Positions 86 to 40,810 of a stretch of DNA of 40,810 nucleotides are shown here, one piece after another. This DNA comes from Octopus bimaculoides. Taxonomy: Eukaryota. The DNA is taken from NCBI RefSeq assembly GCF_001194135.2, contig NC_068988.1, forward strand, positions 17,694,767-17,735,576, read 5' to 3'. The notes beneath the pieces were generated by a model. The model did not search any database, had not been told where the DNA came from, and saw only the letters and a list, made by a program, of their open reading frames with translations. Made by a program: the position numbers and the translations under genes. Within the stretch, counting starts at the first letter, position 1. The number at the start of each line of letters is the position of its first letter.

Positions 86-929
86 ATATATGAGTGCGCG
101 GGCGTGTGTGTGTGATACATGTTTAGGACCAATAGAAAATTTAAATTGGTTAAAAGTACAAAAGAGTCTTTTGTATTGCGATCATCTTGTGTGAAATAAA
201 GCGATTGAAACGTGGAACTAATTTTCTATTTCATTAATTAGCAGTTCTGTGAAATAATGTATTTAGTAATTCATAGCAGATTAAGTAAGTTCATTTTCAT
301 AATTTCAAAATGAATCTTGAAGCTGATTTTTTATCGCATTAAACAGAAAACAACCATAACGATCTAGATCTAGAATTTGTCAAGTTTTTTTTTAATATTT
401 TCTAAGATTGAAAAATATTTGTGTTCCTTGTGCTGTGAATGGGCGGTCATTAGTCAGGTTTCGTAACCGTTTGGCTGTATTTCATCGAAGAATCTTCCAT
501 GATTCTCCATTAAGAAGAAATGGTTTTCTTCATTAAATTGCTTCTTTCAACCAAATGGAAACAACCTTTTCTATTTGAAATATTTAGTCTAACTACTCTT
601 AATTTTTATAATTGTTTTCTTTTTTAATACTTATTTCTTTCTAAATGCATGTCATATTTTATAATTGGTCTGATTAGTCAGTCTATAATTAGTTACTGTA
701 TTTTTTCTTCACTACACAAGTTAATAATTTGATTTTTAGAGAACCAATAGGTCACGTACACATTTTGCCCATTGATTTCGTGATGTGAGTGTATGCGTGT
801 GCGAATGTGTGTATAAGTATGTGTCTGTGTGTCTGTATGTCAGTGCGTGTGTGGTGGGGTGCTATGTGTGTATGCGTGTGCTGATATATGTGGTTAAGCA
901 CGTCTTTCCTATAATTCGTTTTTCAAACT

Positions 930-1090
930 ATGAAATCGGTCATCGGTCTGCAATAAGCTTGCAATTTCACGAGTGGTCAAGCAACAATTAATTTCGATAT
1001 TAGCACGAGCATTATTTGACGTTGGTTCTTCTGGCTTTTTGGACGTCATTTAAAGACGCATTACTTTTTTGTGAAACATTTTCTACTTAG
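930..1090 (-). mobile_element. Degenerate mariner transposase N-terminal (HTH) fragment
   Basis: Minus-strand translation with frameshifts gives RKCFTK..SNASLNDVQK..PTSNNARANIEINCCLTTREIASLL, resembling the mariner 'WF.KF..G..SL.D..RSGRP...LTTREIA' region. No TIR found. Confidence 0.45.
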
Positions 1091-2346
1091 AGAATATGAA
1101 TGAGTATTATTGCCTGTATATTTTAGGTTAATTATACAGTTGCGTATAAGTGCTACCGATGTTTCAACGTTTATGGTATAAACTACGGTGTATCATATTA
1201 ATATCCTTTCTTGGTGTATACTCGAAATTATAAACTTTCGCTAGGCAATGTATTCTACATATGAATCTAATAAATGATTATGAGAAAGTATGAAACCTTT
1301 TGCTTTTAGTTAAAAGGATTAAATACTTCTTGATATAAAGTTAGAATTATTATTTACCTTTCATAAATAATGTTTCATTTTATGAATTTTCCTTGCTAAA
1401 GTATAAATAATCCACAGGTATTTTATGGAAGCTGAGATCATCTGATTTATGTACATATTTTAATAAACATAACGTTAATTGCATACATGATTTAACGCTG
1501 TCCTACCGATAAATATCAATCGTCAAGAATATCAGTGATTCTTTCATTTTGTTGATAATGAAATTCACCATCAACATAACACACATACACACTCAAGCAT
1601 TAATAATCTTCTGTGCAAAACTAAACCACAGAGGATTTATACTTTCTGTACGTGGGTGTGTAACGTCTGCGTATAGTCATAGCCACAAATATAGCTAATC
1701 ATGGAGTTACATTCCTTCATGTAAAAGAGATAAGAAAACTATAGACAAGGGAATATTGTGAACGTAATTCCCTTGACTATAAGTTTCAAAGACATTAAAT
1801 TTCATCTCAATTACCACTATGATAATTGGAATGAAAGACACAATATTCTATCTAAATCTAAATTTGGCCTCCCAAATGCTGTTCATATTATTATATTGGA
1901 CCTCAATAATGAGATTAAACTGCTCTATTAGTCAGAAGTTATGCTTCTTTTTTTCTCTCTTTTTTTCAATTTAAAATCTATTCTTTCAAGAAATCATTTT
2001 ATCCGCTTTGTGCGCTCAATTATCGAAGAATTTACTGCATGCATATTTTCACTATTGGAAACTTTTATAATTAAAATACTATTAAAGTAGTTCTCGTTTT
2101 GATTGTGGCCAATATTTACTCTTTACTTGGAAGCCTTCCATTTAATTTTCTCATCGTTTCTCTTTATCTATCTATCTCCGGCTAAATATATGATTCATTT
2201 TAAATATATTTATACAACATATATACAGACATACATATTTCATGACAACCGTAACAACTATATACACACCTACACACACATGTATATCCATTTTTAATTA
2301 TGCCCTCTCTCTTTTCTCTCTCTCTTAACTCTGTCTCTCCATATGG

Positions 2347-2348
2347 GT

Positions 2349-2407
<59 letters not shown>

Positions 2408-2416
2408 TGTGAGTGT

Positions 2417-2449
<33 letters not shown>
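2347..2449. repeat. Compound (GT)n/(GA)n microsatellite
   Basis: Directly visible. Confidence 0.95.
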
Positions 2450-2452
<3 letters not shown>

Positions 2453-2944
2453 ATGTTCGTTTGTATGTAATGGCTACGGTTGTCACGAAGTCAGTGTTTA
2501 CAAATATGCATATCCATTAAATTATAGAATGAAAAGAACCTATAATTTAAAACAACACGTTAGTTATTCTTTCAATATCTGGTAAAACTTTGATTTCTAT
2601 TTTCACCTACACACACATTATATATAACAATAGTTTGGAAAGATAAAGAGATGTATAGCTCAATACATAGCTTAATACTATGGCCGTGCAGCTATATTCA
2701 GACACTTATACTTTGTAACGAAGAAGAGATTTATATAAGAATATATAAGCCGTTTTGAATGTCATTCTAGCGAAAATAGTTTTAAATAAGCCCTCTTATT
2801 CAAATTTGAGTCACCTGCAATTGTGTCTGAGGTATAAACTGTAAAATTTATATTCTTATTACTACATTCTCTATGTACCTATGTATACACACACACACAC
2901 AAACATATATATATATGTGTGTATGTGTATCTATGTATACACAC

Positions 2945-2997
<53 letters not shown>

Positions 2998-3151
2998 ACT
3001 GTACGCAAGTTTTATTTCATGAAGATAACTCGTGTATAGTTCTGCAAATTATATTGATTCTAGAACGATTGTGCCGATGCGAACACGGATATTGTTACGT
3101 AAGTAAAACTCTAATGTTCGAAACCTGGTACACAATTAATTCTTTATTCTC

Positions 3152-3216
<65 letters not shown>

Positions 3217-3484
3217 NNNNNNNNNNNNNNNNNNNNNNNNNNNNNNNNNNNNNNNNNNNNNNNNNNNNNNNNNNNNNNNNNNNNNNNNNNNNNNNNNNNN
3301 NNNNNNNNNNNNNNNNNNNNNNNNNNNNNNNNNNNNNNNNNNNNNNNNNNNNNNNNNNNNNNNNNNNNNNNNNNNNNNNNNNNNNNNNNNNNNNNNNNNN
3401 NNNNNNNNNNNNNNNNNNNNNNNNNNNNNNNNNNNNNNNNNNNNNNNNNNNNNNNNNNNNNNNNNNNNNNNNNNNNNNNNNNNN
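3217..3484. other. Assembly gap between (CT)n and (TA)n tracts
   Basis: N-run. Other gaps: 18116-18125, 23902-24249, 24677-24764, 28734-28929, 33051-33631, 35826-35954; most abut microsatellites. Confidence 1.
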
Positions 3485-3543
<59 letters not shown>

Positions 3544-6336
3544 AGCGATAGATTGATTGATATATAAAGTTGTATCTGTGCGTGGTTTGGGAAACACCCA
3601 TTGGACAATATTGATCTAGATATTCTTTACCTATGAAAAATAATGGTATCGCCATGACTGATAATAGCTCTGGTCGGTGTGTTGTGACTAGGTCTAAATA
3701 ACGACAACACCACTTCCTATTTCTCAATATATTATTATTTCAAGATTCCAAATTTGAAAATATATAATGATTTTGCATTCTTGATATTCTCGTGCGTGTG
3801 AATATCATTAATAAGAAGGAACTAATGGAGGTTTTATCGGAAATTTTAGCAAATATTATATCTTAATAAAGTAAAGTTCGACATTTTATCATACTTCTAA
3901 CGTTAAGTGTGAGTTAAAATATTACGAAGAATTTCATATATTTTTACTATAAACGAATTTCTAGAATATTCTCCGCTACAGTATTAAACGTTTCTATTTA
4001 TTCAATTGCGCGGAAATAATGCACAAACTCGACGACATAATTTCAAATTACAATCATAATGAACGAAAATAGATTCGTTTCAATATATATTTTCACTATA
4101 TGCAACATTCACTAACGCCTATCTTAATACTAAAATTATAGCAGCCGAACCATGCGTACAATATAGCGAATATAATTTATGTAAAACATAAATGGGGCAA
4201 CTACTTATGAGACTTTCATATAAAACGTATATATAACTTTAAGCTTATTTCTGTTTCAATGAAAGCCATTTTGTTCAATATTTATATATAATCACTCATT
4301 GATATCCAGTATGGCTTGGGTTTATTATTACCTAGAATAAACGCAATCGCATGACTTCACCATATTTTGGATAAAATTATTTAAAATACTGGCAATATTC
4401 AGTTAGTCTAGGAATACTTTGAGTAAATCAAATAACATTATTCAGATTGAGCTACATTAGGATACACAGTGATATGGACGAAGATATGATCCGAAAGCAA
4501 CTACATAAATATCAGAACTAAAGCTAGGAGATAGACAAATCTGAAGCTGGCTTAGAGTAGACATAACATATCAGTGAAGAGGTGAATGGCAACAAAAGAA
4601 TTTTGGAAAATAATTGTTTGGTTGATTAACCGAGTGATTAATCAAACAATCAATTACTTAGTTAAACTGTTAACCAATTGATGAATAAGTAAAATTGAAA
4701 CATTAGGTGTATTTATTATTTGAGTAAGGACATTTCAGAGGCATAGAATATTTAGTTTTACTCTTTTAACATTATCTATAACTTTAATTAAATTCAAAGA
4801 AATTTATTTGATAAACCATTAACAAATATATTACAAAAATATCTATAAAGAAAAAATATTAATTCAACTTTAATCAACCATTTAATACTAAACAATCTCT
4901 TACAATCTATATATGAAGCGTATCCCCCAATATTTAAATTAAAACAAAGCTACTAACATAATTAATGGTAACTAACACTAAAATGTAAAAATAAATAAAC
5001 TAGCTACTATGTAAATCGAATAGCATTTCACCACCATTGGAAGCAGAGTTATTTCAAAATACTGTGCAAACTTTCATAACTAATATATAAAAAGATTATC
5101 TATCTTATCAATGTAATGTCAATATTGCAATGCTTGATGATATGCAATATTATTAGTTAGTGTGTGTGTGTGTATGTGCGTTTTTATGTGTTTGTCTGTC
5201 TGTGTATCTGTGTGTGTGCTTATGTGTGAGATTAATTTTGAAAGAATACAACTCAGTAAAATCATTCTATGATTATCTCCTTGAAAAGCTGCTTTTGTGC
5301 AAAATTCCGCCTGTGTTTCTCAATAAGTGTAAACTATAACTTAGAGAATACATACTATTATTTATGTATATATATCAAGATTTTTGTTTTCTATACTTGC
5401 ACAATGAATTCGGTTTAATTCTAATGGAATTATTAAATCGTTTCATTCGCTTATCTATCCAACTCACTTTTGTATAATTTAATATATGCATTTTTGCTGT
5501 AGTTATCGCTTCAGTAATCAAACTAATGTTAATATCTGTATCCACATAATTAACAAGATTTTACATAACCTGTATTCCTATTGTGGGCGGAGTTATTTCT
5601 ATTTGATTAAATGAAATATAGAAACAAAAGTATATCTGCTGTCGTGGATTGGTCGATCAGTGTTTCAGATTTATAGCCGAGGGCAAACAAACGTGTTTTA
5701 GTCGGAAGAAGATTTACTGACATATTTCCAACAACCTCAATTACATTCTATCAGAGTAAATTGCTATTAATTTTAGTGACTGCTTCTAAGTAATGATGAT
5801 ATTCTATTTGAGTTCGTACTTTCTCACAATGTCAACTTGAATCACTTAATAAAGTTAAATAATTGTATAACAATGAAAGTTCAAATATCAGTATAAACTT
5901 TGTAGAGTAATTCAAGCTCGAAGTTCGAATTTATTTCATTTATCGCTTTTTTACTTTTTTGTTTGCAATTACTAAGAACTTCTGAAAGCCCTAGAAGCAC
6001 TCAATGTGCATACAAGCATTGTTATAATGTATATTACCAAACTCAGAGGTAAATGATATTAAGTGACGGGAAGTTCCATTAGACATGTGCATGCAAATAC
6101 GTTCGCACAACGCATGTATCTCTATATAAATGTGTGTGCGTGTGAAATATATTTCAATAGATGCAATGTGAAGTGCTCAGTCGTTTACACGCCAGTTCAG
6201 GAGTAAGTTATTCAGTTGATCTAATAATTTAAACCACAACTTCGAACGATAGAGACCCTCCTGTATCTATCTATCTATCTATCTTTCTTTCTCTCTCCCA
6301 GCATCTTTCTCCATCTCCTCGCTTTTTCTCTCTCTG

Positions 6337-6408
<72 letters not shown>

Positions 6409-7225
6409 CAATAATTATAACGATAGTGGATATGGAGACTGGTACATACTCAAAATTTATTTCCTTATATTTTACAATGTAATACAGCATATTTTAATGG
6501 TTACGACGACCTACACGTGTTTCCGTTGCACAGAGTATGATCAGTGGCATCTGCAGCCAGGTATAATTTCCTGTGCTTGATTCAGCTTAGTCTACTGGAG
6601 TTGTGTATTTAGTATACAATCTATTTGACCGAGTGAGGAAAACTTACTTGGTGGGCTGTACCGTTTGCTTAAATGGCCTACCTTCGTTTACATAGTACTT
6701 AGTTATAGAGTTCATTCATTATTATCACATTAACAGAATTTTTTGAATTATGGTTCTAGTAACAAAACAGTGAAGAACAACTGTAGTTTTCCACGCTCAT
6801 TAATCTATGCAAAATAGCCGGTGTATAATTTCACCCGCACTAAATTCATCCTTTCCGCAAACAGGGGTATTAAAAACGTAATTAAAATGACTTGCAGTTT
6901 AAAATAAGTTACCTGTCTCAGCACTTTGTTTAGTGTCAGGTTGTTTAGTTGTTAAACTTATAGAACGATCGATACCTAAGTTTTGTAATGTCAGTTCTGT
7001 TTATCATACCTTTATAAAAATAATCAGGCTTTATGACTAAGAAAGTTACATTTGGTCGATTTAATATTTTGCTTACAAAGTTAAAAATTTACGAAATATA
7101 CTTCTTATCGCTAGTCAAATAAAATATAACACACTCTGCAAAATCACTTCCTATACAACTTAACAATGTATTTTCCAGTTTACATGTTCAAGATATTACT
7201 AGTTACACTTTTCCAACAACATGTA

Positions 7226-7257
7226 TTTAATATTTTTTTTTCTTCTTGCAGGTAAGT
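7226..7257 (+). promoter_or_regulatory. Juxtaposed 3'/5' splice site (recursive-splice / ratchet-point-like)
   Basis: TTTAATATTTTTTTTTCTTCTTGCAG|GTAAGT: branch-like TTTAAT, long pyrimidine tract, CAG at 7249-7251, then a perfect donor GTAAGT at 7252-7257. Confidence 0.6.
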
Positions 7258-7894
7258 GCTGTCCATTGATTTCGATTTTACTTCAAAGAAACTATTGTAA
7301 TTGTAAAGACTATAACAGCCTGGGCAACAACGATATAACGTTTACTGTTATTAACGTTAAAAACAAAGACAGGTATATAATTTTTATATGTATATACGTG
7401 TATGTTTATGAATGAATAACTCCGTAAGTATGTATATTTTTAATTTTCTTATTCACGTCGCTCCTAACCACACTAATACAGATTTCAAAATTTCTTGCGT
7501 ATCTGCATAATTTTATTTGTTAGTTGAAATACGCCTTCAGCTTACTTTTTATGAAGTCGCTCGTCAAATGAGCACCAGACCCGTATTTTCTATCTTTCTG
7601 AGGTTTCTTCGCCGTGTTGGCTGCTTACGTGCTACATCTTCTCAGATACTCACAAATCATTCTTCTCATCATCAATGTTACGTTCATTTACTTTAATCTG
7701 CACTGCCTACTGCATCGAGGTTTTCATCGGTTTACTGGAAATCATTACCTGTTCGAGGTTTCCAGCTCTGAACGATTTCCATCTCTGTATCAATTAGAAG
7801 CAGCTAGAGGGATATAAACAATATCGAACACGCATACGCAGGGTATGGATTTTTCTCATGGATTCGTATACATAAAAGCACTCGGATTAATATA

Positions 7895-8175
7895 TTTCCG
7901 TCTGGTGCCAGTCCTTCTCAGTTGAAAGATTTGAGCAAAGACGACTCCAACAGCGGGACCAACTTCATGCAAGAATGAAGACGCGCTGGCAAAACGACGT
8001 TTCTCTAAATGGAAACCTTACTTGTCGTTGTGGTCTTGTGGAACGGAGCAAAGCAGGCCTTGTCGGTCACTCACGAAAACACGTAGCAAATGATCCATAA
8101 GCATACGTGCAAACTGAGTCCTCAACCTGTTCCATTTACGAAGGGGTAAATAGCACCAGCAGTCGTCAAGAGACA
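7895..8175 (+). mobile_element. 3' end of an RTE-clade LINE (ORF C-terminus plus 3' UTR)
   Basis: Frame reads SVWCQSFSVERFEQRRLQQRDQLHARMKTRWQNDVSLNGNLTCRCGLVERSKAGLVGHSRKHVANDP*, matching the RTE C-terminal pattern 'W...FE..R...RK....C..C.R...S..GL..H.R.H'. It ends at a CA-rich tract. Confidence 0.65.
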
Positions 8176-8280
8176 CATTCGTATCCATAAAACATAATCA
8201 CTACTTTGTTACTGAACCCACATTTGTCATTCACGACAAGAGAATCTAATACACCCACCCCCCACACACACACACAAACA

Positions 8281-8320
<40 letters not shown>

Positions 8321-8733
8321 CACACACATATATATACACATATATATACATATATACATTTGTATATATATATATACATATCTATACACAAACATACGCG
8401 CATACTTATATGTATATTATAGTAGTGTACGTTTCATGAACCGTTGTCTAATATATATAAATATTTGATTGTTTTGTTAAAGCAAAGCAATGCATATTAA
8501 AAATTAAGGTCGGTGGTTAGTACTATTACATAGCGTTTTAATATTCATATATGTCGTATATATACTTTTAACTGGCATTGTTTTGCCTTTAAAACATTTC
8601 TAATACTTATATATGTACGAATGTGTATCTGTGTGTGCGAGCAGCAGTGTGCCAGCGATACAGAAAAATCATCATTACTTTCAGTTCGTTTTATGTATTT
8701 GTTGCTCGTTGTTAACTTTGCCGGTTCTCACAG

Positions 8734-8820: not shown

Positions 8821-9930
8821 GTATGTATACACCAAGCTAACAATTACTGGATCTCAGTGTAATAAATCTGATTTCTCTTTCTGACTTTCGTTCATTTAAC
8901 CTTCAGCTTCGCACTAACTAAATTGTTTTCATAAATACTAACTTAATAAACTTTTAAACCAAATTAACGAAAAATACCAACGCTTCAACAGCAAACTAAA
9001 ATCAGTTTTATCTATAATGCTCTCTCCGTTGGTACAAAGTTCAGTGTTTGTTTCTGTGTGTCTTTGTGCCGTTTTGTATAGATGTCTACACATCCGCTGA
9101 TACACACAGGCAGATACACATACGCATAAACTCTTAGACACATACGTATGTATATGGGTATATTTATATGTATCTTCGTGTGTTTACATGTATGCAGTTA
9201 TGCCAGTATATGTATGTGTGTTGCAGGTATACACACACGCACACACACACGCACACGCACACGCACACGCACACACACGCACACATATATATATATATAT
9301 ATATATATGGTGGTTGTCTACTCCTTAAACAGAGTTTGACCACCTCCTGCACCTACACCTTAGCCCTTTCATGGCGTCTGATGTGGCTTTTTAAACCAGA
9401 CAGTGTTTTGAAAAAACACCCACACAGATTGCACCTCTGATTTGCACTACCAATACATATATATATATATATATATATATGTAGCTGAATAGCCTGTTGT
9501 TCCATGCTAGACCGTTCCTCTTGATCAGGACAGGTTTGTGGAGGATTTCTTTTCCTTTCAAAATATGTACATGTCTCTTCGACCGTTTCACATGACTTTA
9601 TTCATTAAAACTTATTAAAATTTCAGAAGTTCTTACAACTTAGGTCATCATAACACTTTGCTGTCGTTTGTTTAATAATAATTCCTCTTCCTAATAATTT
9701 TGCTTTCATTTAGTGATAGACAGCTATCATGCAGAAAATGCCAGCTTCCAAATACAGTTTTCTAATTATGTAAAATTGATTAAACTTTAAACCTCAGTAA
9801 CATTTTTTGGCAATTTTTCTGGAACAAATAAAATAACCAAACCGGATTTAACGTGGAACATTATTTCAATATACCAAATTTGAAAATCTTGACGAAATTT
9901 TAAAATCTCGAATCAGACAGTTATAAGACA

Positions 9931-13499: not shown

Positions 13500-15075
13500 C
13501 CTCTTTCAGTGTTTCTTTCTCTCAACCCCCGCTTCTCTCCTCCTAGGAGCATTATACTTGCTATTTAGCCGAAAGCCTTACAGAAATAGTAAATACATAT
13601 TCTTAACAGGATTGTTTTACTTTTAGTAATATCTTCAAGAAATATTATTCTAGAGTTTCGTATCCAGATCATTGCAAAGTTTATCACTTTTTCTGCATCT
13701 TCCACCTCTTATAATGTTCAGTTTGTCTTTAACTCAGTGGCATAGTTTCAAATTTATAGTGCCTGTTCACTTCCCCTATACGGATTTCAACATACATACT
13801 AACAATCGTTGTAAAGTATAAACAGTCCTATCGGAGAATTTGTTTACGAATCACACCCTGACCTCTTAAAAATGAAATATCTGTTCGTGCATATTTTTTA
13901 TTTACAAGACCCTTGATAAACGAAGAGCTTGTCATTTACAGATGGCGCGGATTTAATAATAGGTTTGTTTAATCAGTTCTCAAGTGGCTCGCCACCGCAA
14001 CCGAAGCTCTGCTGCAACTTGAATTCGAAATTAACAGCTATGAAATGTCACGATTTTCATACCAATACGCTTTAGTTGTTTATTTTTTAAGCATTGCTTA
14101 CATAATATTGTGTTTTTGAATATTTTTGCTTATTGTGAATTATCCATTTTCTCTCAAATACAATACATACATATTACATATAGGATTCAAAGTTTGGGAA
14201 TTTCCCCTATATATTGTTTTCCTTTTTCTAGTTTTCTTTCCACATTCTACTTCTAATGATAGCTGGGATATGCTAAACGAATAAACAGCTGAATCTACTA
14301 TCATATTTGTTAGTTTTACAGTTGATATTCGAGCAGTTGATAAAAGGAGAGAAGTTGACGGAACGTGCTTACTACTAAAATAGACGATCGAATGACTAAA
14401 TGGAGAATCTATCATATATTTTCTTGCTGATGGTCTCATTTTTGTAACTCGTACCTTATTTTCAAGATTTTGTTACTGGAATTAGTTTTGTTGAAGTTGC
14501 AGTAAAAGTTAAGAACAATATAAGGCTTGGATAATTCATTATTATGTTTGTGTTTGAAGGGTATATTAATTCATGCCTCAAGTTCACAGCTTATTACAAC
14601 ACACGTTTCCAAATGATTTGATTTATTCTTTCCCCAATATTTCCCTTGTGTGGAATAAAAATATTAAGATGCTTACACTTTGTATTAGTGATAAGAAATT
14701 ATTATAGCCGTAGGAGTATATTATTCATGTGATTGTGATGGTCTAGGTGCAGATGCATGATAATTAAGAAATACACTGTTGCTGACGATAATAATGGTAG
14801 TCATTGTGCAATGGTTAATATTAGTGATTATGTTTATTATTGATGTTTTTTACTGCTAATTCTGTAGAAGGAATTTTACTTGTGAGTTAAGAAGTATACA
14901 CTGAAATGTATATACTATTTTTGATTGTTCATACTACAATGTGATTTCTTTATTTCTCTCAAATATTCAAAACTAAATGTATTTAAAACTAATTATAGAA
15001 TATATATATTTGAATTTTAAATCTGATAAAATGTGTCTTTCAGGGAACAATGAAATTCTTTGAAATATTTAATAC

Positions 15076-15132: not shown

Positions 15133-16496
15133 CATAGTATTCCTATGAAATGAATTACAAAAGAATCTTTGCAATGGATACGATAGAGGGTAAATCTAGC
15201 CGAAAGTATATTGCAAGTATATTGCATTAGCAACAAATTTAATAAAGTTATTCTATCACGCCGTTTTCTAAATCAACAGCAGAAACGATGGAATAATTTT
15301 TCTTGAAGGTAATACTAAAAATATAACAGTCCTATTAATAATATATATTTACTATTTTTGTAATTCTTTCAACCAAATAAAAAGTAAAATGCTCTTAGAA
15401 AACGAGAATCTTAAAAATAAAGTAACCATGATACAGAAGAAAGCTTTTATATATTAAAAAAAAACACATAATTTCAGACCAACGTTTGAACATGTATATG
15501 AAATATAAATCATATAAGTTCACAAAGCATGTTTTCAATGTTTAAATTCTTCAAAAGTTTCTTTGAATATTGTAATATTGTTTAGAGAATAATTATATTT
15601 TCATCAGCTAAATGCTTATCTAATAACTTAACGAAAATGATTTTTAACAAACATGTTGCTTTGGTTCAGACATTTTCATAGGCAATATATTATGTAGTGT
15701 ACGTTCAAGTATGAAAAAGTATCACTTCATAAGGTAAGAAATTCGTTTACATATCTTAATCTACACTTTCAGCAATTACAGTGCAGAAGGTGCATATTAT
15801 CTGTTCAAAAACACAAATATTGTTAGCTTTACTTAAACATGTATTTGGTGTCAGAATTTCGTGGAACCTACTGTGTCATCTTCACTAAAAGACAGTCTCA
15901 GATCAAATCACTTGCTAGACAAGTACATCTCCGAAAAATCTACAAAATGCCTCCCATTTACATATCAAGTTAACACAATCTCTCTGTACATAGACAGTAT
16001 TCTGTATCCCACCCGATTCTCTCTCTCCCTCTCTTTATTTTTTTCTCTCTTTGTCTTAGTCTTTATCTATCTACCTCACTATGTATGTATGCATGTATGT
16101 ATGTATCTATATATCTGTATGTCTGTCTGTCTGTCTGTCAATCGACCTAGCTTTTCTCTACTGTATAGTGTTACTGTCTGTTACTAGCTTTTCTTCACTG
16201 TATATTCTGTTACTGTTGGGATAGCATTCAACAAGCGAAAGCACCAAGTTTACACACACACACACACACTCACGCACATACAGACAGCACACATATGCAC
16301 ACTGATACATAAGCCACACACACACACATTCCACACTCATCAACACACAAAGATGTGCTGGCATACATATTGATTATCTTTTCGTGTCAGATGCTAGCCG
16401 TCTCATATTACTCATATGTACATCAGTAGCTAATAGTGACTTTTGACTCTTAATATCTAAAACTAAATATCTGGTGACAAGCAAGAGCAAGATTAC

Positions 16497-16667: not shown

Positions 16668-16724
<57 letters not shown>

Positions 16725-16726
16725 TA

Positions 16727-16896
16727 CAGAAAAAAATTAAGGTACTCAGAAATCTGGATGTTTGTACAGATTTTTATTAATGTCACATATTAAATAAAGC
16801 GCTTTTCACCTAGTCTAAGCGCTTTATTTAATATGTGACGTTAATAAAAAATCTGTACAAACATCCAGATTTCTGAGTACCTTCATTTTTTTTCTA
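16727..16896. mobile_element. Near-perfect 170-bp fold-back, TA-flanked (MITE-like)
   Basis: Core arms 16739-16804 and 16817-16883 are reverse complements with 1 mismatch and 1 bulge around a 12-nt loop (TTCACCTAGTCT). Pairing extends to the ends CAG...CTA, with TA at 16725-16726 and 16897-16898. Confidence 0.75.
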
Positions 16897-16999
16897 TATA
16901 ATTTCTGTACATCACCTGCAAACCTTCCAATATATATATACATATACACATATACATATTCATATATGTATATGCATATACGTATTCATATATATATGC

Positions 17000-17230: not shown

Positions 17231-18109
17231 CAGGGTGCGGTTAATAAATTGCCGTCTAAATTGCGCAAAAATGAAAATAGCACTGACATCTCATTTTAAC
17301 AGATATATTTACAAAATTACATTAAAAAAATCTTGAAATACTGAAGAGTAAATTTATTCAATAAAACCACCATTAGCTTCAACCCAGGTCTCCAGACGAC
17401 TAAGGAATCTCCTGCAACTCTTCTGGACGGTCTCCTTGCTCAAGTTGGTGAGTGTTGCCATAATCCTTGCCTTCAGTTCATCTTTGGTGTTACAAGGATT
17501 TTTGTTGGTCTCTCGCTGAATTGCACCCTACAGATAATAATGAAGGGGGTTGCAGTCTGGGGAGTTACGCGGTCAAATGTTACGGGTGATGTGCTCGCAG
17601 AAATTGTCTGACAGCCATGACTGGTTTCTCCTGCTTGTGTGGCATAGCGCAGAGTCCTGTTGCCAGACCTAGGGTCTTCTAGCAGCCACCCTCTTGACGC
17701 AGGGCAGCATTACTTCCTCCAGGCACTTGATGCAGGCCTCCGTGTTCAGTCTGAGGCCGTGTGGGATGATGAATGGAGGTATAACTAGTGATCACTCCAA
17801 ACACCATGATGTTGACTGAATGTTTGATTTTTATCACTTTCGGTACATGTCCCCAGATTGCACTGCCCTCAGATTGACAACTAACCACTGTGAAATATTC
17901 ATATTGGTGTTTCCGGTACCAAGGTCAAGCAGCACAGCATGTCGTTTCCAAATTTCTGGCAGAGTGAATTGAATCATGGTGTTGGTTTTCTGACAGACAG
18001 TGCCCAACCGACCCTGCTATACTGTGTAGTCGACAAAATCAAAAAACAAACAATGCGCATGAGCGAAATAAAGAATATCAAATAGTGACAATTTACCCAT
18101 TGCACCTTG
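17231..18109 (-). mobile_element. Internally deleted DD37D (maT-type) Tc1/mariner transposon with both TIRs and TA TSDs
   Basis: TIRs CAGGGTGCGGTTAATAAATTGCC and CAAGGTGCAATGGGTAAATTGTC (16/23 identical); TA at 17229-17230 and 18110-18111. ATG at 17977 gives MIQFTLPEIWKRHAVLLDLGTGNTNMNISQWLVVNLRAV, joined to ..NIMVFGVITS..PPFIIPHGLRLNTEACIKCLEEVMLPCVKR..VWQQDSALCHT..NSPDCNPLHYY..KDELKARI..LETWVEANGGFIE* (stop 17356-17354). There are 37 residues between the QQD Asp and the third catalytic position, which is mutated D to H. Confidence 0.9.
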
Positions 18110-20351: not shown

Positions 20352-21243
20352 GTGTGTGTATGTATGTATGTATATATATATATATATATATATATCTATA
20401 TATACATACATAACATACAAATATACATATATGTGCGATACATATACGTATGCATTTACATATCTGTGTGAGTGTGTATATAACAAAAAAACCACAACAC
20501 CAATAACAATATATTCACGTACGGGTATATATTGCTGTTGGTGCTCTGCATTTTGATGTTTTCGTTATAATGATGATCCGATTTGTGTGACCGTTAAAAT
20601 TATTTTAATCCAACCATAATCTGAAATTATTCCGAACCTATATAAAAGTTTGCTGGCTACTTTAGTTTAATCCGATATTGGTGACTGAAGCATGAATTTT
20701 CTGAGGCGTATACAAACTTAACTGTAGTGTTGTTATATAAAGAATGAAAACGTCTTGCATGTATACTGCCGATCAAACATCTGTGAATTTTATGCGGATA
20801 CACTGACTTGAGGTTCTTCGTATTTTGGTTTATGTATTGAATTTATATAATTGTCTATGTGGTGTCGAGTTTTTTAGTATATGTTGCTATGGGCCCAGTT
20901 CATGAAAATTCATGATCTTGATGGACCGTCACCAAACAATTGACCAACTTTTTGTTATGATTGGTGAGTCAGGGAGCACCTGGCAACGAATTTTAAGCGA
21001 AGAATTCTTTTGACTATCATTTCTTACAGGACGGGTGACCACATAGAGATTTCCACACTGGCTCATTGCATCGTAGTGTTGTCGGTGGTGGTAGGGATGA
21101 TGGTGGTGATGGGTCGGTGCTGCTGCTTTTGCTGCTGGTGATGGTGATACTGTTGTTGTTGTTGTTGTTGTTGTGGCGCTGCTGCTGCTGCTACTGGTGA
21201 CGGTGGTATGGTGTGGTGTTCGTATGATTAAAGTCAAAACTTC

Positions 21244-23115: not shown

Positions 23116-23136
23116 CATATAATATATATATATATA

Positions 23137-23393
23137 CTGTTGTGTCTGTGGAGAGTCATTCTCTTTTAGTGTCTTATAATTTAACACACTCACTAGTAAA
23201 ATTTCCATTTATTTGCTTTTTTATTTTTCTAAAATTTTCATTGCGTCTTGCAACCTTTTCAACTATTGGAAAAGTTGCGAGACGCAACGAAAATTTTAGA
23301 AAAATAATGAAGGAAATACAAGTGTAAATTTTACCGGTGTGGGTGTTAAATTATAAGACACTAAAAGATAATGACTCTCCCCAGACACAACAG
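23137..23393. mobile_element. 257-bp fold-back MITE-like element
   Basis: Outer arms 23137-23204 and 23326-23393 (68 bp, 6 mismatches; ends CTGTTG..CAACAG). Inner arms TTATTTTTCTAAAATTTTCATTGCGTCTTGCAACCTTTTC and GAAAAGTTGCGAGACGCAACGAAAATTTTAGAAAAATAA are also complementary around a short loop. Left flank is TA; right flank is AATA. Confidence 0.8.
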
Positions 23394-23810
23394 AATATGC
23401 TTCAACACACGACGTCGTAAGCGACGGAATACCAACACTATGAATATATATACAAACACGCATGTACGTATCGTATGCATCAGATACATAAACAGGGCAA
23501 ATTTACTAATTACTCCTTAAACTAGAAAAAAATTACGAACAGCCTTAATAGATTTTCGAACTGTAGATGATGCCTATGATGGATGTTAGGTAAAAAAATC
23601 TGCCAATTTGTGTATATACTCAGCAAATCTAGTAGCTACAGTGAACTGATACTATTAATTTGCATACCGTGTTTAAGCCTTTATCAATATCAGCGGTTTG
23701 TCAACGCAGATTCCATACTTGAAGGTATTCCTTCGTAGACACAACATTAAAAGATGAAATAGCTTTTATTGAATTATGAACTTTCTAGATTCCTCAGCAG
23801 AGGTGACAAT

Positions 23811-24249: not shown

Positions 24250-24607
24250 TATATATATATATACTCGTGTGTATGTGTATATATATATATATATGTGTAT
24301 ATATATATATACTCGTGTGTATGTGTATATATATATATATATGTATATATATACTCGTGTGTATGTGTATATATATATATATGTATATATATACTCGTGT
24401 GTATGTGTGTATATATATATATATGTATATATATATACTCGTGTGTATGTGTATATATATATATATGTATATATATATACTCGTGTGTATGTGTATATAT
24501 GTATATATATATACTCGTGTGTATGTGTATATATATGTATATATATATACTCGTGTGTATGTGTATATATATATATATATGTATATATATATACTCGTGT
24601 GTATGTG

Positions 24608-24641
<34 letters not shown>

Positions 24642-24676
24642 CTCGTGTGTATGTGTATATATATATATATATATAT
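24250..24676. repeat. Minisatellite: 10 copies of ACTCGTGTGTATGTG separated by variable (TA)n spacers
   Basis: Cores near 24263, 24311, 24353, 24393, 24437, 24479, 24512, 24549, 24593 and 24641. Bounded by gaps on both sides. Confidence 0.9.
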
Positions 24677-28650: not shown

Positions 28651-28733
28651 CTGCCGGAGCCTCGTGGAGTTTTAGGTGTTTTCGCTCAATAAACACTCAC
28701 AACGCCCGGTCTGGGAATCGAAACCGCGATCCT
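28651..28733 (-). mobile_element. Young tRNA-derived SINE (family A), minus strand, runs into a gap
   Basis: 81 of 83 nt identical to the reverse complement of 40669-40751. Confidence 0.9.
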
Positions 28734-30997: not shown

Positions 30998-31096
30998 ATC
31001 ATTTGTTAAGGTTATCACTCCAGATATTCTATAGAAATTATCAGTACTGGCTATTATTTCTATAAAATATCTGTTGAGATAACCTTAACAAATGAT
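30998..31096. repeat. Inverted repeat: 41-bp arms, 17-nt loop
   Basis: ATCATTTGTTAAGGTTATCACTCCAGATATTCTATAGAAAT (30998-31038) pairs with 31056-31096. The first 19 bp are perfect, followed by an internal mismatch patch and one single mismatch. Confidence 0.85.
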
Positions 31097-31296: not shown

Positions 31297-31418
31297 GTGT
31301 ATATATATAGATATAGATATATATATAGAGAGAGAGAGAGACATATATATATAGATAGATATAGAGATATATATATATATAGAGAGAGAGAGACATATAT
31401 AGATAGATAGATAGATAG

Positions 31419-31451
<33 letters not shown>

Positions 31452-31591
31452 CATATATATAGATAGATAGATAGATAGATAGATATAGATATATATATAG
31501 AGAGAGAGAGATAGATATAGATATATATATAGAGAGATATAGATATATATATATAGATATATATATATATATAGATATATATATATATATA
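31297..31591. repeat. Compound TA/GA/GATA repeat with higher-order units
   Basis: Recurrent (TA)n-(GA)n-CA-(TA)n-(GATA)n blocks. Confidence 0.9.
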
Positions 31592-37808: not shown

Positions 37809-38959
37809 CAAGGGACGGTTGAAAAGCTCAATGGCTAACATACCTAGGATATGACCAAATGAGGTTACTTATTAACATAGTCCCTTTTGCAGTCCACAAA
37901 CTTCTTCCATTGGTGCTGGATTTCATTAGCGAAGAAGCTTTCATCCTGTTGGTAAAAAAGTTATCAACAGCAGATATGACATTATCATCACTGCGATATA
38001 GGTTCCCAGAACAAGTGGGGTTTTTTTTATGTTGAAGAGCAGACGATAGGTTCAAAGCCATAGTCACGCACAGCAGCCATTGAAGCAAACGATTTGTATA
38101 CTGGGAGTTTGGACTTGATCGCCTTTCGTAACTACCTCAGCAGGTAGGCATATTACTCTCTATTGCAGGACACTTTTGAAGATAGTCAATAAACACAACG
38201 ACTTTTGCATCTCCCAAAACTGAGGTCATCACCTTCCGTACAGATGAAACGACCTTGGCCTCCTTTGGAGGGAGTGAGGAGGGGTGTTTTTATTGCACGG
38301 ATTGTCTCTTTGTCTGTGGCTTAGGAAACTATGAAGGAAACCAGCTGGATCTGCCTGAACAACGTTAGATTTTCCTGTGATGTTATCAGCCTGTGGTTTT
38401 CATCAAATGTAAGAGGAGGTAGTACCCAGGAAAAACCTTCGACATGCCAAGCCCATTGTGCAGAATATTCTCAACTCGCTCATGGGCCAATGTTAACAGC
38501 ATTGGCTATTTTATTTATGGTCAATCGCCTTCCTTGCATCACCATGTGGCGAACACGATCAATGTTTTCTTCGGTAGTATCGGGTGTAGGACGTCCAGAC
38601 CTTAGGTAAACTTCAAGACTCTCCCTTCTTCTAAATTCAGCTGCTCCCTTTTGCACTGTTGATAAAGCTAGTGCGTCATCCCCTAATGTAGTAACCATGT
38701 CAGCATGAATGGCCTTGAGAGTTAAACTCTTTTTCTGCAGGTACTTGATAACATCACGATGCCAAATTTTGTCCATTTCCAAGACTAGTCTCTACTAGTT
38801 ACTTTTTATGTCTTCTTTGAACTGTCAGATGTGAGTTTACCTGGAAAGAAACAATGCAGTTTATTACTAAGGAGAGTTGAACTTAATGCATTCAAAATTT
38901 CGCAGCTCTAGCATCAAGCCTTCGTATATTCCGTCAATGAACATTTTAGCCCACCCTCG
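37809..38959 (-). mobile_element. Degenerate mariner transposon with both TIRs and TA TSDs
   Basis: TIRs CAAGGGACGGTTGAAAAGCTCAATGGC and CGAGGGTGGGCTAAAATGTTCATTGAC; TA at 37807-37808 and 38960-38961. ATG at 38776 gives MDKIWHRDVIKYLQKKSLTLKAIHADMVTTLGDDALALSTVQKGAAEFRR..RSGRP..NIDRVRHMVMQGRRLTINKIANAVNI, then a WVPRLL-like WVLPPL, KVMTSVLGDAKVVVFIDYL and ..YRSDDNVISAVDNFF..HQWKKFVDCKRDYVNK* (stop 37867-37865). Several frameshifts and deletions; catalytic motifs lost. Confidence 0.9.
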
Positions 38960-40623: not shown

Positions 40624-40810
40624 GGAGGCGTAATGGCCCAGTGGTTAGGGCAGCGGACTCGCGGTCATAGGATCGCGGTTTCGATTCCCAGACCGGGCGT
40701 TGTGAGTGTTTATTGAGCGAAGACACCTAAAGCTCCACGAGGCTCCGGCAGGGGATGGTGGCGAATCCTGCTGTACTCTTTCACCACAACTTTCTCTCAC
40801 TCTCACTCTT
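40624..40810 (+). mobile_element. Young tRNA-derived SINE (family A), continues past the window end
   Basis: A-box TGGCCCAGTGG (40634-40644) and B-box GGTTTCGATTCCC (40677-40689), followed by a tRNA-unrelated body. A near-identical inverted copy lies at 28651-28733. Confidence 0.9.

What the first reader, a model, noticed from the sequence alone, without database searches (positions are those of the whole stretch)
7226..7429. Recursive-splice (zero-length exon) site with downstream cryptic donors
Seen: a strong acceptor (branch-like TTTAAT, 17-nt pyrimidine run, GCAG) fused directly to a perfect GTAAGT donor. Downstream are donors AG|GTATAT (7373; would define a 121-nt exon with an open frame) and GTAAGT (7424; 172 nt). 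Known: polyY-AG|GTAAGT ratchet points mediate stepwise removal of very long introns in Drosophila and vertebrates, usually with a cryptic RS-exon defined by a downstream donor. Inference: much of this window may be a long intron of a plus-strand gene removed recursively. I know of no description of this in cephalopods but cannot check the literature.
Basis: partly seen in the sequence, partly recalled or inferred. Interest (0 to 1): 0.75.

Follow-up and report, generated by a model that had tools for sequence, protein, structure and literature searches.

The report
Recursive-splice-like motif, probably chance
A textbook splice acceptor fused directly to a perfect splice donor is present in this AT-rich, repeat-filled, non-coding (probably octopus) DNA, but a genome this size should produce hundreds of such motifs by chance, and nothing available here shows it is transcribed, conserved or used.

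Summary
The motif is at the stated coordinates: branch-like TTAAT (A at 7230), a 15-nt (not 17-nt) pyrimidine run at 7233-7247, GCAG|GTAAGT at 7248-7257, and downstream donors at 7373 and 7424. It is the only AGGTAAGT in the window and the best of 208 AGGT sites on both strands. Simulations expect 0.004-0.012 strict motifs per window, or 0.05-0.09 by joint score. That extrapolates to hundreds or thousands of chance sites in a genome of about 2.7 Gb. The downstream donors are weak and occur at chance frequency. The 121-nt "exon" has background GC (0.32) and no real protein homologue.

The interpretation cannot be tested with these tools. No eukaryotic genome, annotation or RNA-seq was reachable, and no orthologous sequence was found. 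No coding exon was recognised among the 93 ORF segments of 40 aa or more that were searched (all such segments in 6800-8200, and elsewhere those with GC of at least 0.37). The window could therefore be a very long intron or intergenic DNA, and the transcribed strand is unknown.

My estimates are chance juxtaposition about 0.55, genuine recursive site about 0.18, and acceptor of an ordinary unannotated or cryptic exon about 0.15. If genuine, it would be a new member of a known kind. The held literature has no report of recursive splicing in cephalopods. Interest is low until strand, conservation and junction reads are checked.

The parts
7227..7231 (+). Branch-point-like TTAAT (yUnAy), with the A at 7230, 21 nt upstream of the acceptor AG
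   Evidence: It is the only yUnAy match in 7191-7245. Matches like this are common in AT-rich DNA.
7233..7247 (+). Uninterrupted 15-nt pyrimidine tract TTTTTTTTTCTTCTT, with TT at -6/-5 relative to the junction
   Evidence: 17 of the 20 nt before AG are pyrimidines. The acceptor ranks 10 of 1915 AG sites on the + strand.
7248..7251 (+). Acceptor GCAG. The putative splice junction lies after 7251.
   Evidence: The nearest upstream AG is at 7201.
7252..7257 (+). Consensus donor GTAAGT abutting the acceptor (CAG|GTAAGT)
   Evidence: the only AGGTAAGT in the window on either strand; 13.0 bits, rank 1 of 2444 GT sites.
7252..7372 (+). Candidate cryptic recursive-splice exon of 121 nt (3n+1). It is open only in the frame starting at 7254, and its GC is 0.32.
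   Evidence: No homologue was found. It ranks 9th of 40 exon-like acceptor/ORF/donor combinations in the window.
7373..7378 (+). Weak downstream donor CAG|GTATAT
   Evidence: 5.45 bits, rank 112 of 2444.
7424..7429 (+). Downstream GTAAGT hexamer in a poor exon-side context (TCC|GTAAGT). It would give a 172-nt (3n+1) exon with stops in all three frames.
   Evidence: 4.35 bits, rank 198 of 2444. A second GTAAGT within 170 nt has p of about 0.03.

Best explanation
The site is most likely a chance juxtaposition. A T-rich tract ending in CAG happens to sit next to the hexamer GTAAGT in AT-rich, low-complexity, non-coding DNA, and the pair has no selected role. On this reading nothing recognises it, either because the + strand is not part of a pre-mRNA here (intergenic DNA, or the antisense strand of a gene) or because it is one of many unused decoy sites.

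One caveat, which is an inference and not shown here: if the + strand does run through an intron, a site this close to consensus would probably be seen by U2AF/U2 and U1. It would then behave as a cryptic or stochastic recursive site whether or not selection maintains it.
For: - The strict motif is expected 0-0.012 times per 39 kb, or about 0.004 from the window's own acceptor and donor frequencies. An equal joint score is expected 0.05-0.09 times per window. That scales to hundreds or thousands of chance sites per ~2.7 Gb genome, and a scan of many windows will meet them.
- The window is dense with T-, TC- and TA-rich low-complexity DNA, which generates acceptor-like tracts. Nine + strand AG sites outscore this acceptor.
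- There is no second recursive-like site on the + strand (next best 9.4 and 7.0 bits).
- The downstream donors are at chance density.
- The putative exon has background GC (0.32, against flanks of 0.30 and 0.38). It has no homologue. The single library hit is an artefact of five tandem repeats in a Bacteroidota surface protein: one repeat unit alone gives E = 2.2e3.
- The searched ORF segments of 40 aa or more matched no protein on either strand. The database does hold Octopus vulgaris proteins.
- In O. vulgaris the median intron is 2.5 kb and there are 8.4 genes per Mb (PMC10700109). By my estimate from these figures, an exon-free 40.8-kb stretch is more often intergenic than one giant intron.
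- In mammals only about 20 of millions of intronic AGGT sites are true recursive sites (PMC8797253).
Against: - Within the window the site is a clear outlier: donor rank 1 of 2444 and a joint score 4 bits above any other AGGT site.
- It carries every sequence feature of fly ratchet points that can be scored: a long pyrimidine tract, TT at -5/-6 (99.5% of fly ratchet points; bioRxiv 10.1101/006163), GTAAGT, a ratchet donor stronger than the downstream donors, and frame-shifting cryptic exons (PMC8605326).
- AGGTAAGT plus a pyrimidine tract is what separates true recursive from non-recursive AGGT sites in mouse.
- The null is a Markov model trained on a single 40-kb window, not the real genome.
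Confidence: 0.55

Rival explanations
1. It is a genuine recursive splice site (ratchet point) in a very long intron of a + strand gene. U2AF/U2 recognise the TTAAT branch point, the pyrimidine tract and the CAG. Exon definition is helped by U1 at a downstream donor (7373 or 7424). The upstream exon is ligated to 7252, which regenerates exon|GTAAGT. That stronger donor then outcompetes the downstream one, so the 121- or 172-nt cryptic exon is removed with the rest of the intron and leaves no trace in the mRNA.
For: - The motif matches fly and vertebrate recursive-site logos, including TT at -5/-6.
- The ratchet donor scores 13.0 bits, against 5.45 and 4.35 for the downstream donors. This is the expected direction of donor competition.
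- Both candidate cryptic exons are 3n+1 nt and carry stops in at least two frames, as is typical of fly cryptic recursive exons.
- It is the best AGGT site in the window.
- No coding exon was recognised in the ORF segments searched across the 40.8 kb, so a giant intron is possible.
- Octopus neuronal genes are long (PMC7222433).
- Recursive sites occur in most fly introns over 40 kb (PMC6110457).
Against: - There is no evidence for + strand transcription, for an upstream exon, for conservation or for junction reads. None of these is testable here.
- Chance alone supplies comparable numbers of such sites genome-wide.
- Recursive splicing is rare in mammals and was not widespread in lungfish. 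It has not been reported in any lophotrochozoan in the held literature.
- The candidate cryptic exon is longer (121 nt) than the ~50 nt typical in flies.
- The polyadenylation-signal counts and base skews do not indicate + strand transcription.
Confidence: 0.18
2. It is the acceptor of an ordinary but unannotated exon that happens to begin with GTAAGT. The exon could be alternative, poison, UTR, lncRNA or cryptic. It would be spliced conventionally and included (7252-7372 or a longer version) in some transcripts.
For: - It has a strong acceptor and usable downstream donors at exon-like distances (121, 148 and 172 nt).
- One frame is open across the 121 nt.
- In mouse brain, 46 of the 84 AGGT sites with junction reads were unannotated exons and only 19 were recursive sites.
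- Mammals are reported to have more than 6,400 expressed exons that start with a donor.
Against: - No protein anywhere matches the open frame, and Pfam gives nothing.
- GC is 0.32, equal to the background.
- As an exon candidate it ranks only 9th of 40 chance-level candidates on both strands.
- The downstream donors are weak.
- The transcribed strand is unknown.
Confidence: 0.15
3. This concerns origin rather than function. The pyrimidine tract would be the complement of the A-rich 3' tail of a - strand retroposon, which creates a pseudo-acceptor in the way antisense Alu tails do in primates. The adjacent GTAAGT would be fortuitous.
For: - On the - strand, 7233-7251 reads CTGCAAGAAGAAAAAAAAA, which is tail-like.
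- A 9-mer, TTTAATATT, occurs both at 7226 and at 8537, so it could be a target-site duplication.
- The window carries other interspersed repeats.
Against: - A 9-mer match of that AT-rich composition is at or below chance expectation.
- No other copy of 7000-7800 exists in the window.
- ORFs from 6800-8200 hit no transposable-element protein.
- No repeat library for this genome was available.
Confidence: 0.05
4. It is an intronic U1 snRNP landing site. The 9-nt complement to U1, CAGGTAAGT, would be kept to suppress premature cleavage and polyadenylation in a long, AT-rich transcript that is full of polyadenylation signals (telescripting). It would not be used for splicing.
For: - CAGGTAAGT is perfectly complementary to the U1 5' end (U1 pairing noted).
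- The + strand carries 77 A[AT]TAAA hexamers in 40 kb.
Against: - This does not explain the adjoining strong acceptor.
- It is the only such site in 40 kb, whereas telescripting relies on many sites.
- The transcribed strand is unknown, and polyadenylation hexamers are not significantly depleted on the + strand (77 against 93).
Confidence: 0.03

Closest known systems
Drosophila intronic ratchet points ('zero-nucleotide exon' recursive splice sites: Hatton 1998; Burnette 2005; Duff 2015; Joseph 2018)
   Same: - Acceptor and donor juxtaposed around AG|GT, with a long pyrimidine tract.
- TT at -5/-6 and a GTAAGT donor.
- A weaker downstream donor that could define a cryptic recursive exon.
- Candidate cryptic exons that are out of frame.
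   Different: - Fly sites are defined by ultraconservation, location in the sense strand of introns usually over 40 kb, saw-tooth coverage and junction or lariat reads. None of these is shown here.
- Fly cryptic recursive exons are about 50 nt. Here the nearest usable donor gives 121 nt.
- The taxon is different and has no reported recursive splicing.
Vertebrate recursive-splice exons in long neuronal genes (Sibley 2015; Blazquez 2018; Moon and Zhao 2022)
   Same: - The AGGTAAGT core with an upstream pyrimidine tract, which is what distinguishes true recursive from non-recursive AGGT sites in mouse.
- An exon-definition model with a downstream donor.
- A cryptic exon that would break the reading frame if included.
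   Different: - Vertebrate sites are very rare (9-20 strict cases). They are highly conserved and lie in first or second introns over 51 kb of genes over 294 kb.
- Here the host gene, intron rank, intron length and conservation are all unknown.
Decoy or cryptic splice-site pairs and unannotated, poison or cryptic exons in long introns
   Same: - An isolated strong acceptor followed by usable donors at exon-like spacing.
- No coding homology and background base composition.
   Different: A perfect consensus donor placed exactly at +1 of the acceptor is not a feature of ordinary cryptic exons. In mouse 'recursive-like' cryptic exons the strong donor is the downstream one, not the regenerated one. 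Here the strengths are the other way round.
Exonisation-prone acceptors created by antisense retroposon poly(A) tails (the Alu-type mechanism)
   Same: A T-run followed by AG on the strand opposite a possible A-rich tail.
   Different: No element body was identified, no target-site duplication beyond chance, and no second copy.

Membership tests
Recursive splice site / ratchet point | Strong acceptor and donor juxtaposed around AG|GT (pyrimidine tract, YAG|GTAAGT) | tested here: met
   TTTTTTTTTCTTCTTGCAG|GTAAGT at 7233-7257. The donor ranks 1 of 2444, the acceptor 10 of 1915, and the site is the best of 208 AGGT sites.
Recursive splice site / ratchet point | TT at positions -5 and -6 of the acceptor (196 of 197 fly ratchet points) | tested here: met
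   Positions -6 and -5 are T and T. The criterion comes from bioRxiv 10.1101/006163. It is weak evidence, because TT is common in any T-rich tract.
Recursive splice site / ratchet point | Lies on the sense strand of a long intron (flies usually over 40 kb, mouse over 51 kb) of an expressed gene | not testable with these tools
   No annotation or genome of the source organism was reachable. The searched ORF segments of 40 aa or more matched no protein, which fits both a giant intron and intergenic DNA. The strand proxies are indecisive.
Recursive splice site / ratchet point | A downstream donor defining a cryptic recursive exon, weaker than the regenerated ratchet donor | tested here: met
   The donors at 7373 (5.45 bits) and 7424 (4.35 bits) are weaker than the ratchet donor (13.0 bits). 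Donors of that strength occur about every 200 nt by chance, so the test has little power.
Recursive splice site / ratchet point | The cryptic exon is frame-disrupting or stop-containing and has poorly conserved content | tested here: met
   121 and 172 nt are both 3n+1. Two of three frames have stops within 121 nt, and all three within 172 nt. There is no homologue. This is also what random DNA would show.
Recursive splice site / ratchet point | The acceptor|donor core is conserved as an island in orthologous introns | not testable with these tools
   No orthologous DNA was obtainable. Exact-protein look-ups found nothing on record. The one 20-mer hit in a metagenome has no flanking similarity.
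Recursive splice site / ratchet point | Splicing intermediates: junction reads from the upstream exon to the site, saw-tooth coverage, recursive lariats | not testable with these tools
   No RNA-seq access.
Ordinary protein-coding exon | An open frame with detectable homologues or a coding-like composition | tested here: not met
   - 0 hits among 5.8 billion proteins.
- 1 hit among 1.84 billion representatives, shown to be a tandem-repeat artefact: one repeat unit gives E = 2.2e3.
- No Pfam match.
- GC is 0.32, equal to the background.
Interspersed repeat / transposable-element-derived sequence | Other copies, transposable-element protein remnants or target-site duplications around the site | tested here: inconclusive
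   There is no second copy in the window and no transposable-element protein hit for 6800-8200. The only candidate duplication is a chance-level 9-mer. A genome-wide repeat library was not available.

The most novel reading that the evidence does not exclude
The site is a conserved, constitutively used ratchet point in a giant intron of a + strand gene, plausibly neuronal, of an octopus. That would be the first recursive splice site documented in a lophotrochozoan. It would imply that stepwise removal of long introns through pyrimidine-tract-CAG|GTAAGT sites with cryptic recursive exons is either ancestral to Bilateria or was recruited again when cephalopod introns expanded.
Probability: 0.15. 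Interest if true: 0.55.

Novelty: not a real feature. Interest (0 to 1): 0.17.

Why it matters
Recursive splicing has been demonstrated only in Drosophila and a few vertebrates. The held literature contains no paper that links it to octopus or cephalopods. Cephalopods independently evolved large genomes and long, neuronally expressed genes.

A verified ratchet point there would extend the mechanism to the third great bilaterian clade. It would also bear on whether recursive splicing is an ancestral solution to long introns. One unvalidated motif in one window does not do that. Its value is as a prompt for a cheap genome-wide test: the sense/antisense excess and the conservation of such motifs in long octopus introns. 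If it is chance, as I think most likely, it is ordinary.

Tried and rejected
1. Orthologous or same-locus DNA through exact-protein look-ups. I tried ORF 7221-7415 (which spans the site), ORF 20929-21237, the mariner ORF and a 112-aa ORF. None is on record.
2. Homology search with every ORF segment of 40 aa or more in 6800-8200, both strands: 0 hits. My guess that 7891-8097 is a LINE zinc-knuckle tail is therefore unsupported, and Pfam also finds nothing there.
3. Exon hunt with 79 ORF segments of GC at least 0.37 across the rest of the window: 0 hits. Lower-GC ORFs and ORFs under 40 aa were never searched.
Its one hit, P0009 (E = 6e-6), is a Bacteroidota type IX secretion surface protein with five tandem Ig-like repeats. 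The best single domain scores 9.7 bits and one repeat unit gives E = 2.2e3, so I rejected it as an artefact.
5. A metagenome scan for the 20-mer across the junction gave one contig (L001, GC 0.48) with no similarity beyond the 20 nt. This is a chance hit.
6. Strand-of-transcription proxies: polyadenylation hexamers 77 (+) against 93 (-), AT skew -0.037 and GC skew -0.013 after microsatellite masking. These are indecisive and uncalibrated for this taxon.
7. Antisense-retroposon-tail origin: only a chance-level 9-mer candidate for a target-site duplication.
8. Rfam and ARAGORN found nothing in the window.
9. Organism identity: mariner remnants match an Octopus vulgaris protein at 74% but also a cichlid protein at 75%. 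The octopus origin is plausible from the microsatellite-dense, 33% GC, gap-ridden sequence, but it is not proven.
10. The repeat finder on the whole window returned only microsatellite noise.
11. MaxEntScan was not available, so all splice-site scores are my own generic metazoan weight matrices, not octopus-trained models.

Full report
THE SEQUENCE. The window is 40,810 bases at about 33% GC. It has seven N gaps and dozens of TA, TG, TC and trinucleotide microsatellites. The only taxon-bearing evidence is a decayed mariner/Mos1 transposase. Its relatives include an Octopus vulgaris protein at 74% identity and also a cichlid SETMAR-like protein at 75%. The origin is therefore plausible but not proven.

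THE OBSERVATION.
- TTTAAT at 7226-7231. TTAAT fits the branch consensus, with the A at 7230, 21 nt from the acceptor.
- A pyrimidine run at 7233-7247.
- GCAG at 7248-7251, fused to GTAAGT at 7252-7257.
- CAG|GTATAT at 7373 and TCC|GTAAGT at 7424.

Two corrections are needed. The uninterrupted pyrimidine run is 15 nt, not 17 (17 of the last 20 nt are pyrimidines). The 121-nt segment is open in only one of three frames, and the 172-nt version has stops in all three.

IS IT MORE THAN CHANCE? Within the window the site stands out:
- It is the only AGGTAAGT on either strand.
- Its donor ranks 1 of 2444 GT sites and its acceptor ranks 10 of 1915 AG sites on the + strand.
- Its joint score is 13.6 bits, against 9.4 and 7.0 for the next best of 208 AGGT sites on both strands.

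Sequences simulated from Markov models (orders 1, 3 and 5) trained on the window give 0-0.012 strict motifs per 39 kb. They give 0.05-0.09 sites with an equal joint score. Multiplying the window's own acceptor and donor frequencies gives about 0.004. So p is roughly 0.01-0.09 for one window. Scaled to a ~2.7 Gb genome of this composition, that is about 300-6000 chance sites, and a scan that reads many windows will meet them.

The downstream donors carry no weight. They score 5.45 and 4.35 bits, and donors that good occur about once per 200 nt. Only the bare hexamer GTAAGT recurring within 172 nt is mildly unusual (p about 0.03), and it sits in a poor exon-side context.

WHAT SURROUNDS IT.
- No other part of the window resembles 7000-7800 (dust-masked self-BLASTN).
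- All 14 ORF segments of 40 aa or more in 6800-8200, on both strands, found no homologue among 5.8 billion proteins.
- 79 higher-GC ORF segments (GC at least 0.37) from the rest of the window also found nothing. The database does hold octopus proteins.
- In O. vulgaris the median intron is about 2.5 kb (PMC10700109), so a typical gene would have shown several exons in 40 kb.
- The window is therefore either intergenic or inside one or two very long introns. From the reported gene density (8.4 genes per Mb, median gene 20 kb), I estimate that intergenic DNA is the more common source of an exon-free 40-kb stretch.
- Strand-of-transcription proxies are indecisive: polyadenylation hexamers 77 (+) against 93 (-), AT skew -0.037, GC skew -0.013.

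THE CANDIDATE EXON ITSELF.
- The stretch 7252-7372 has GC 0.32, the same as its flanks.
- It ranks 9th of 40 chance-level acceptor/ORF/donor combinations found on both strands.
- An exhaustive HMMER search with the ORF that spans it returned one protein at E = 6e-6. That protein is a Bacteroidota type IX secretion surface protein with five near-identical tandem repeats. Each repeat scores only 8-10 bits, and a single repeat unit gives E = 2.2e3 at library size. The hit comes from summing one weak resemblance five times.
- There is no evidence that this is coding sequence.

COMPARISON WITH KNOWN RECURSIVE SITES. The literature defines ratchet points by these features (PMC8605326; PMC6110457; PMC8797253; bioRxiv 10.1101/006163):
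- a tandem acceptor|donor with a prominent pyrimidine tract;
- TT at -5/-6 (196 of 197 fly sites);
- a downstream, weaker donor that defines a short, poorly conserved, usually out-of-frame cryptic exon;
- ultraconservation of the core;
- residence in very long introns (flies over 40 kb, mouse over 51 kb);
- junction reads and saw-tooth coverage.

The four sequence-level criteria are met here. The candidate cryptic exon is longer than the fly norm. All four are also cheap for random AT-rich DNA to satisfy. The three discriminating criteria are genomic context, conservation and RNA evidence, and none can be tested with the tools at hand.

Base rates differ sharply by lineage. More than 500 intronic ratchet points are known in flies, whose long introns mostly have one. 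Mammals have only about 9-20 strict sites. In mouse brain, 46 of the 84 AGGT sites with junction reads were simply unannotated exons and 19 were recursive. A lungfish study found no expansion of recursive splicing with intron size. No held paper mentions recursive splicing together with octopus or cephalopods.

WEIGHING THE READINGS. My prior that an exon-free 40-kb octopus window is a + strand giant intron is below about 0.1. I put the chance that cephalopods use fly-like ratchet points at about 0.3, under which such a window would often contain one. The chance expectation is 0.01-0.09 per window. Together these give roughly 0.15-0.2 for a genuine recursive site. I assign:
- 0.55 to a chance juxtaposition with no selected role;
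- 0.18 to a true ratchet point;
- 0.15 to the acceptor of an ordinary unannotated or cryptic exon;
- small remainders to an antisense retroposon-tail origin (the only candidate target-site duplication is a chance-level 9-mer) and to a U1 landing site.

If the + strand is transcribed through here, I would expect a site this close to consensus to be spliced at some level whether or not it is selected. That is an inference, not something shown.

VERDICT. On numbers it is more likely a chance motif. If real, it would be a new member of a known kind in a new phylum, which is moderately interesting. The decisive checks are simple and external:
- map the window to an annotated octopus assembly;
- look for junction reads and saw-tooth coverage in total RNA-seq;
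- test conservation in other octopods;
- test the genome-wide sense/antisense excess of such motifs.

Noticed in passing
window 37831-38791 (- strand): A decayed mariner/Mos1-type transposase split over at least three frames. Pfam Transposase_1 matches at E = 5.7e-4, below the cut-off. Homologues at 67-75% identity include an Octopus vulgaris hypothetical protein and a cichlid SETMAR-like protein.
   Followed up: partly
window 28651-28733 and 40669-40751: An 83-bp interspersed repeat at 97.6% identity, in inverted orientation. The first copy is cut by an N gap. It carries a B-box-like GGTTTCGATTCC on the complementary strand, so it may be a tRNA-derived SINE, but ARAGORN and Rfam call nothing.
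   Followed up: partly
window 23132-23398; 16670-16960; 30998-31096; pair 13543-13659 / 15282-15398: Self-complementary stretches that look like foldback elements or MITEs (for example 85.5% over 269 bp at 23132-23398), and a 117-bp inverted pair at 81% identity bracketing about 1.6 kb, possibly terminal inverted repeats of a DNA transposon.
   Followed up: no
window ~21040-21200 (ORF 20929-21237, - strand): A GC-richer island (0.45-0.53) made of CAG/CAA/CAC-type triplets. It is open in all three - strand frames (polyQ, polyThr/Ser, His-rich). There are no convincing - strand splice signals and the ORF is not on record. Its homology was never searched. If it were a - strand exon, site 7252 could lie antisense to that gene.
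   Followed up: partly
window 9356-9601 (- strand): An ORF ending in a C2H2-type zinc finger (CNLCGCFFKTLSGLKSHIRRH). Pfam zf-C2H2 matches at E = 4.6e-5, just below the cut-off. It may be a remnant of a transposable element or a zinc-finger gene.
   Followed up: partly
window 24250-24676 and 31301-31591: Minisatellites with units of 42 bp (10 copies) and 60 bp (5 copies), embedded in TA-rich arrays and flanked by N gaps. There are seven N gaps in all (268, 10, 348, 88, 196, 582 and 129 nt), mostly inside microsatellites.
   Followed up: no
window 17357-17924 (- strand): A GC-rich (0.45-0.57) patch with overlapping ORFs whose C-terminal piece reads like a Tc1/mariner transposase tail. Neither Pfam nor the homology search confirmed this.
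   Followed up: partly
L001 (metagenome contig Ga0123356_10864226) 201-220: An exact 20-mer match to the junction sequence CTTCTTGCAGGTAAGTGCTG in an unrelated contig of GC 0.48, with no flanking similarity. This shows how easily this motif arises by chance in large sequence collections.
   Followed up: yes
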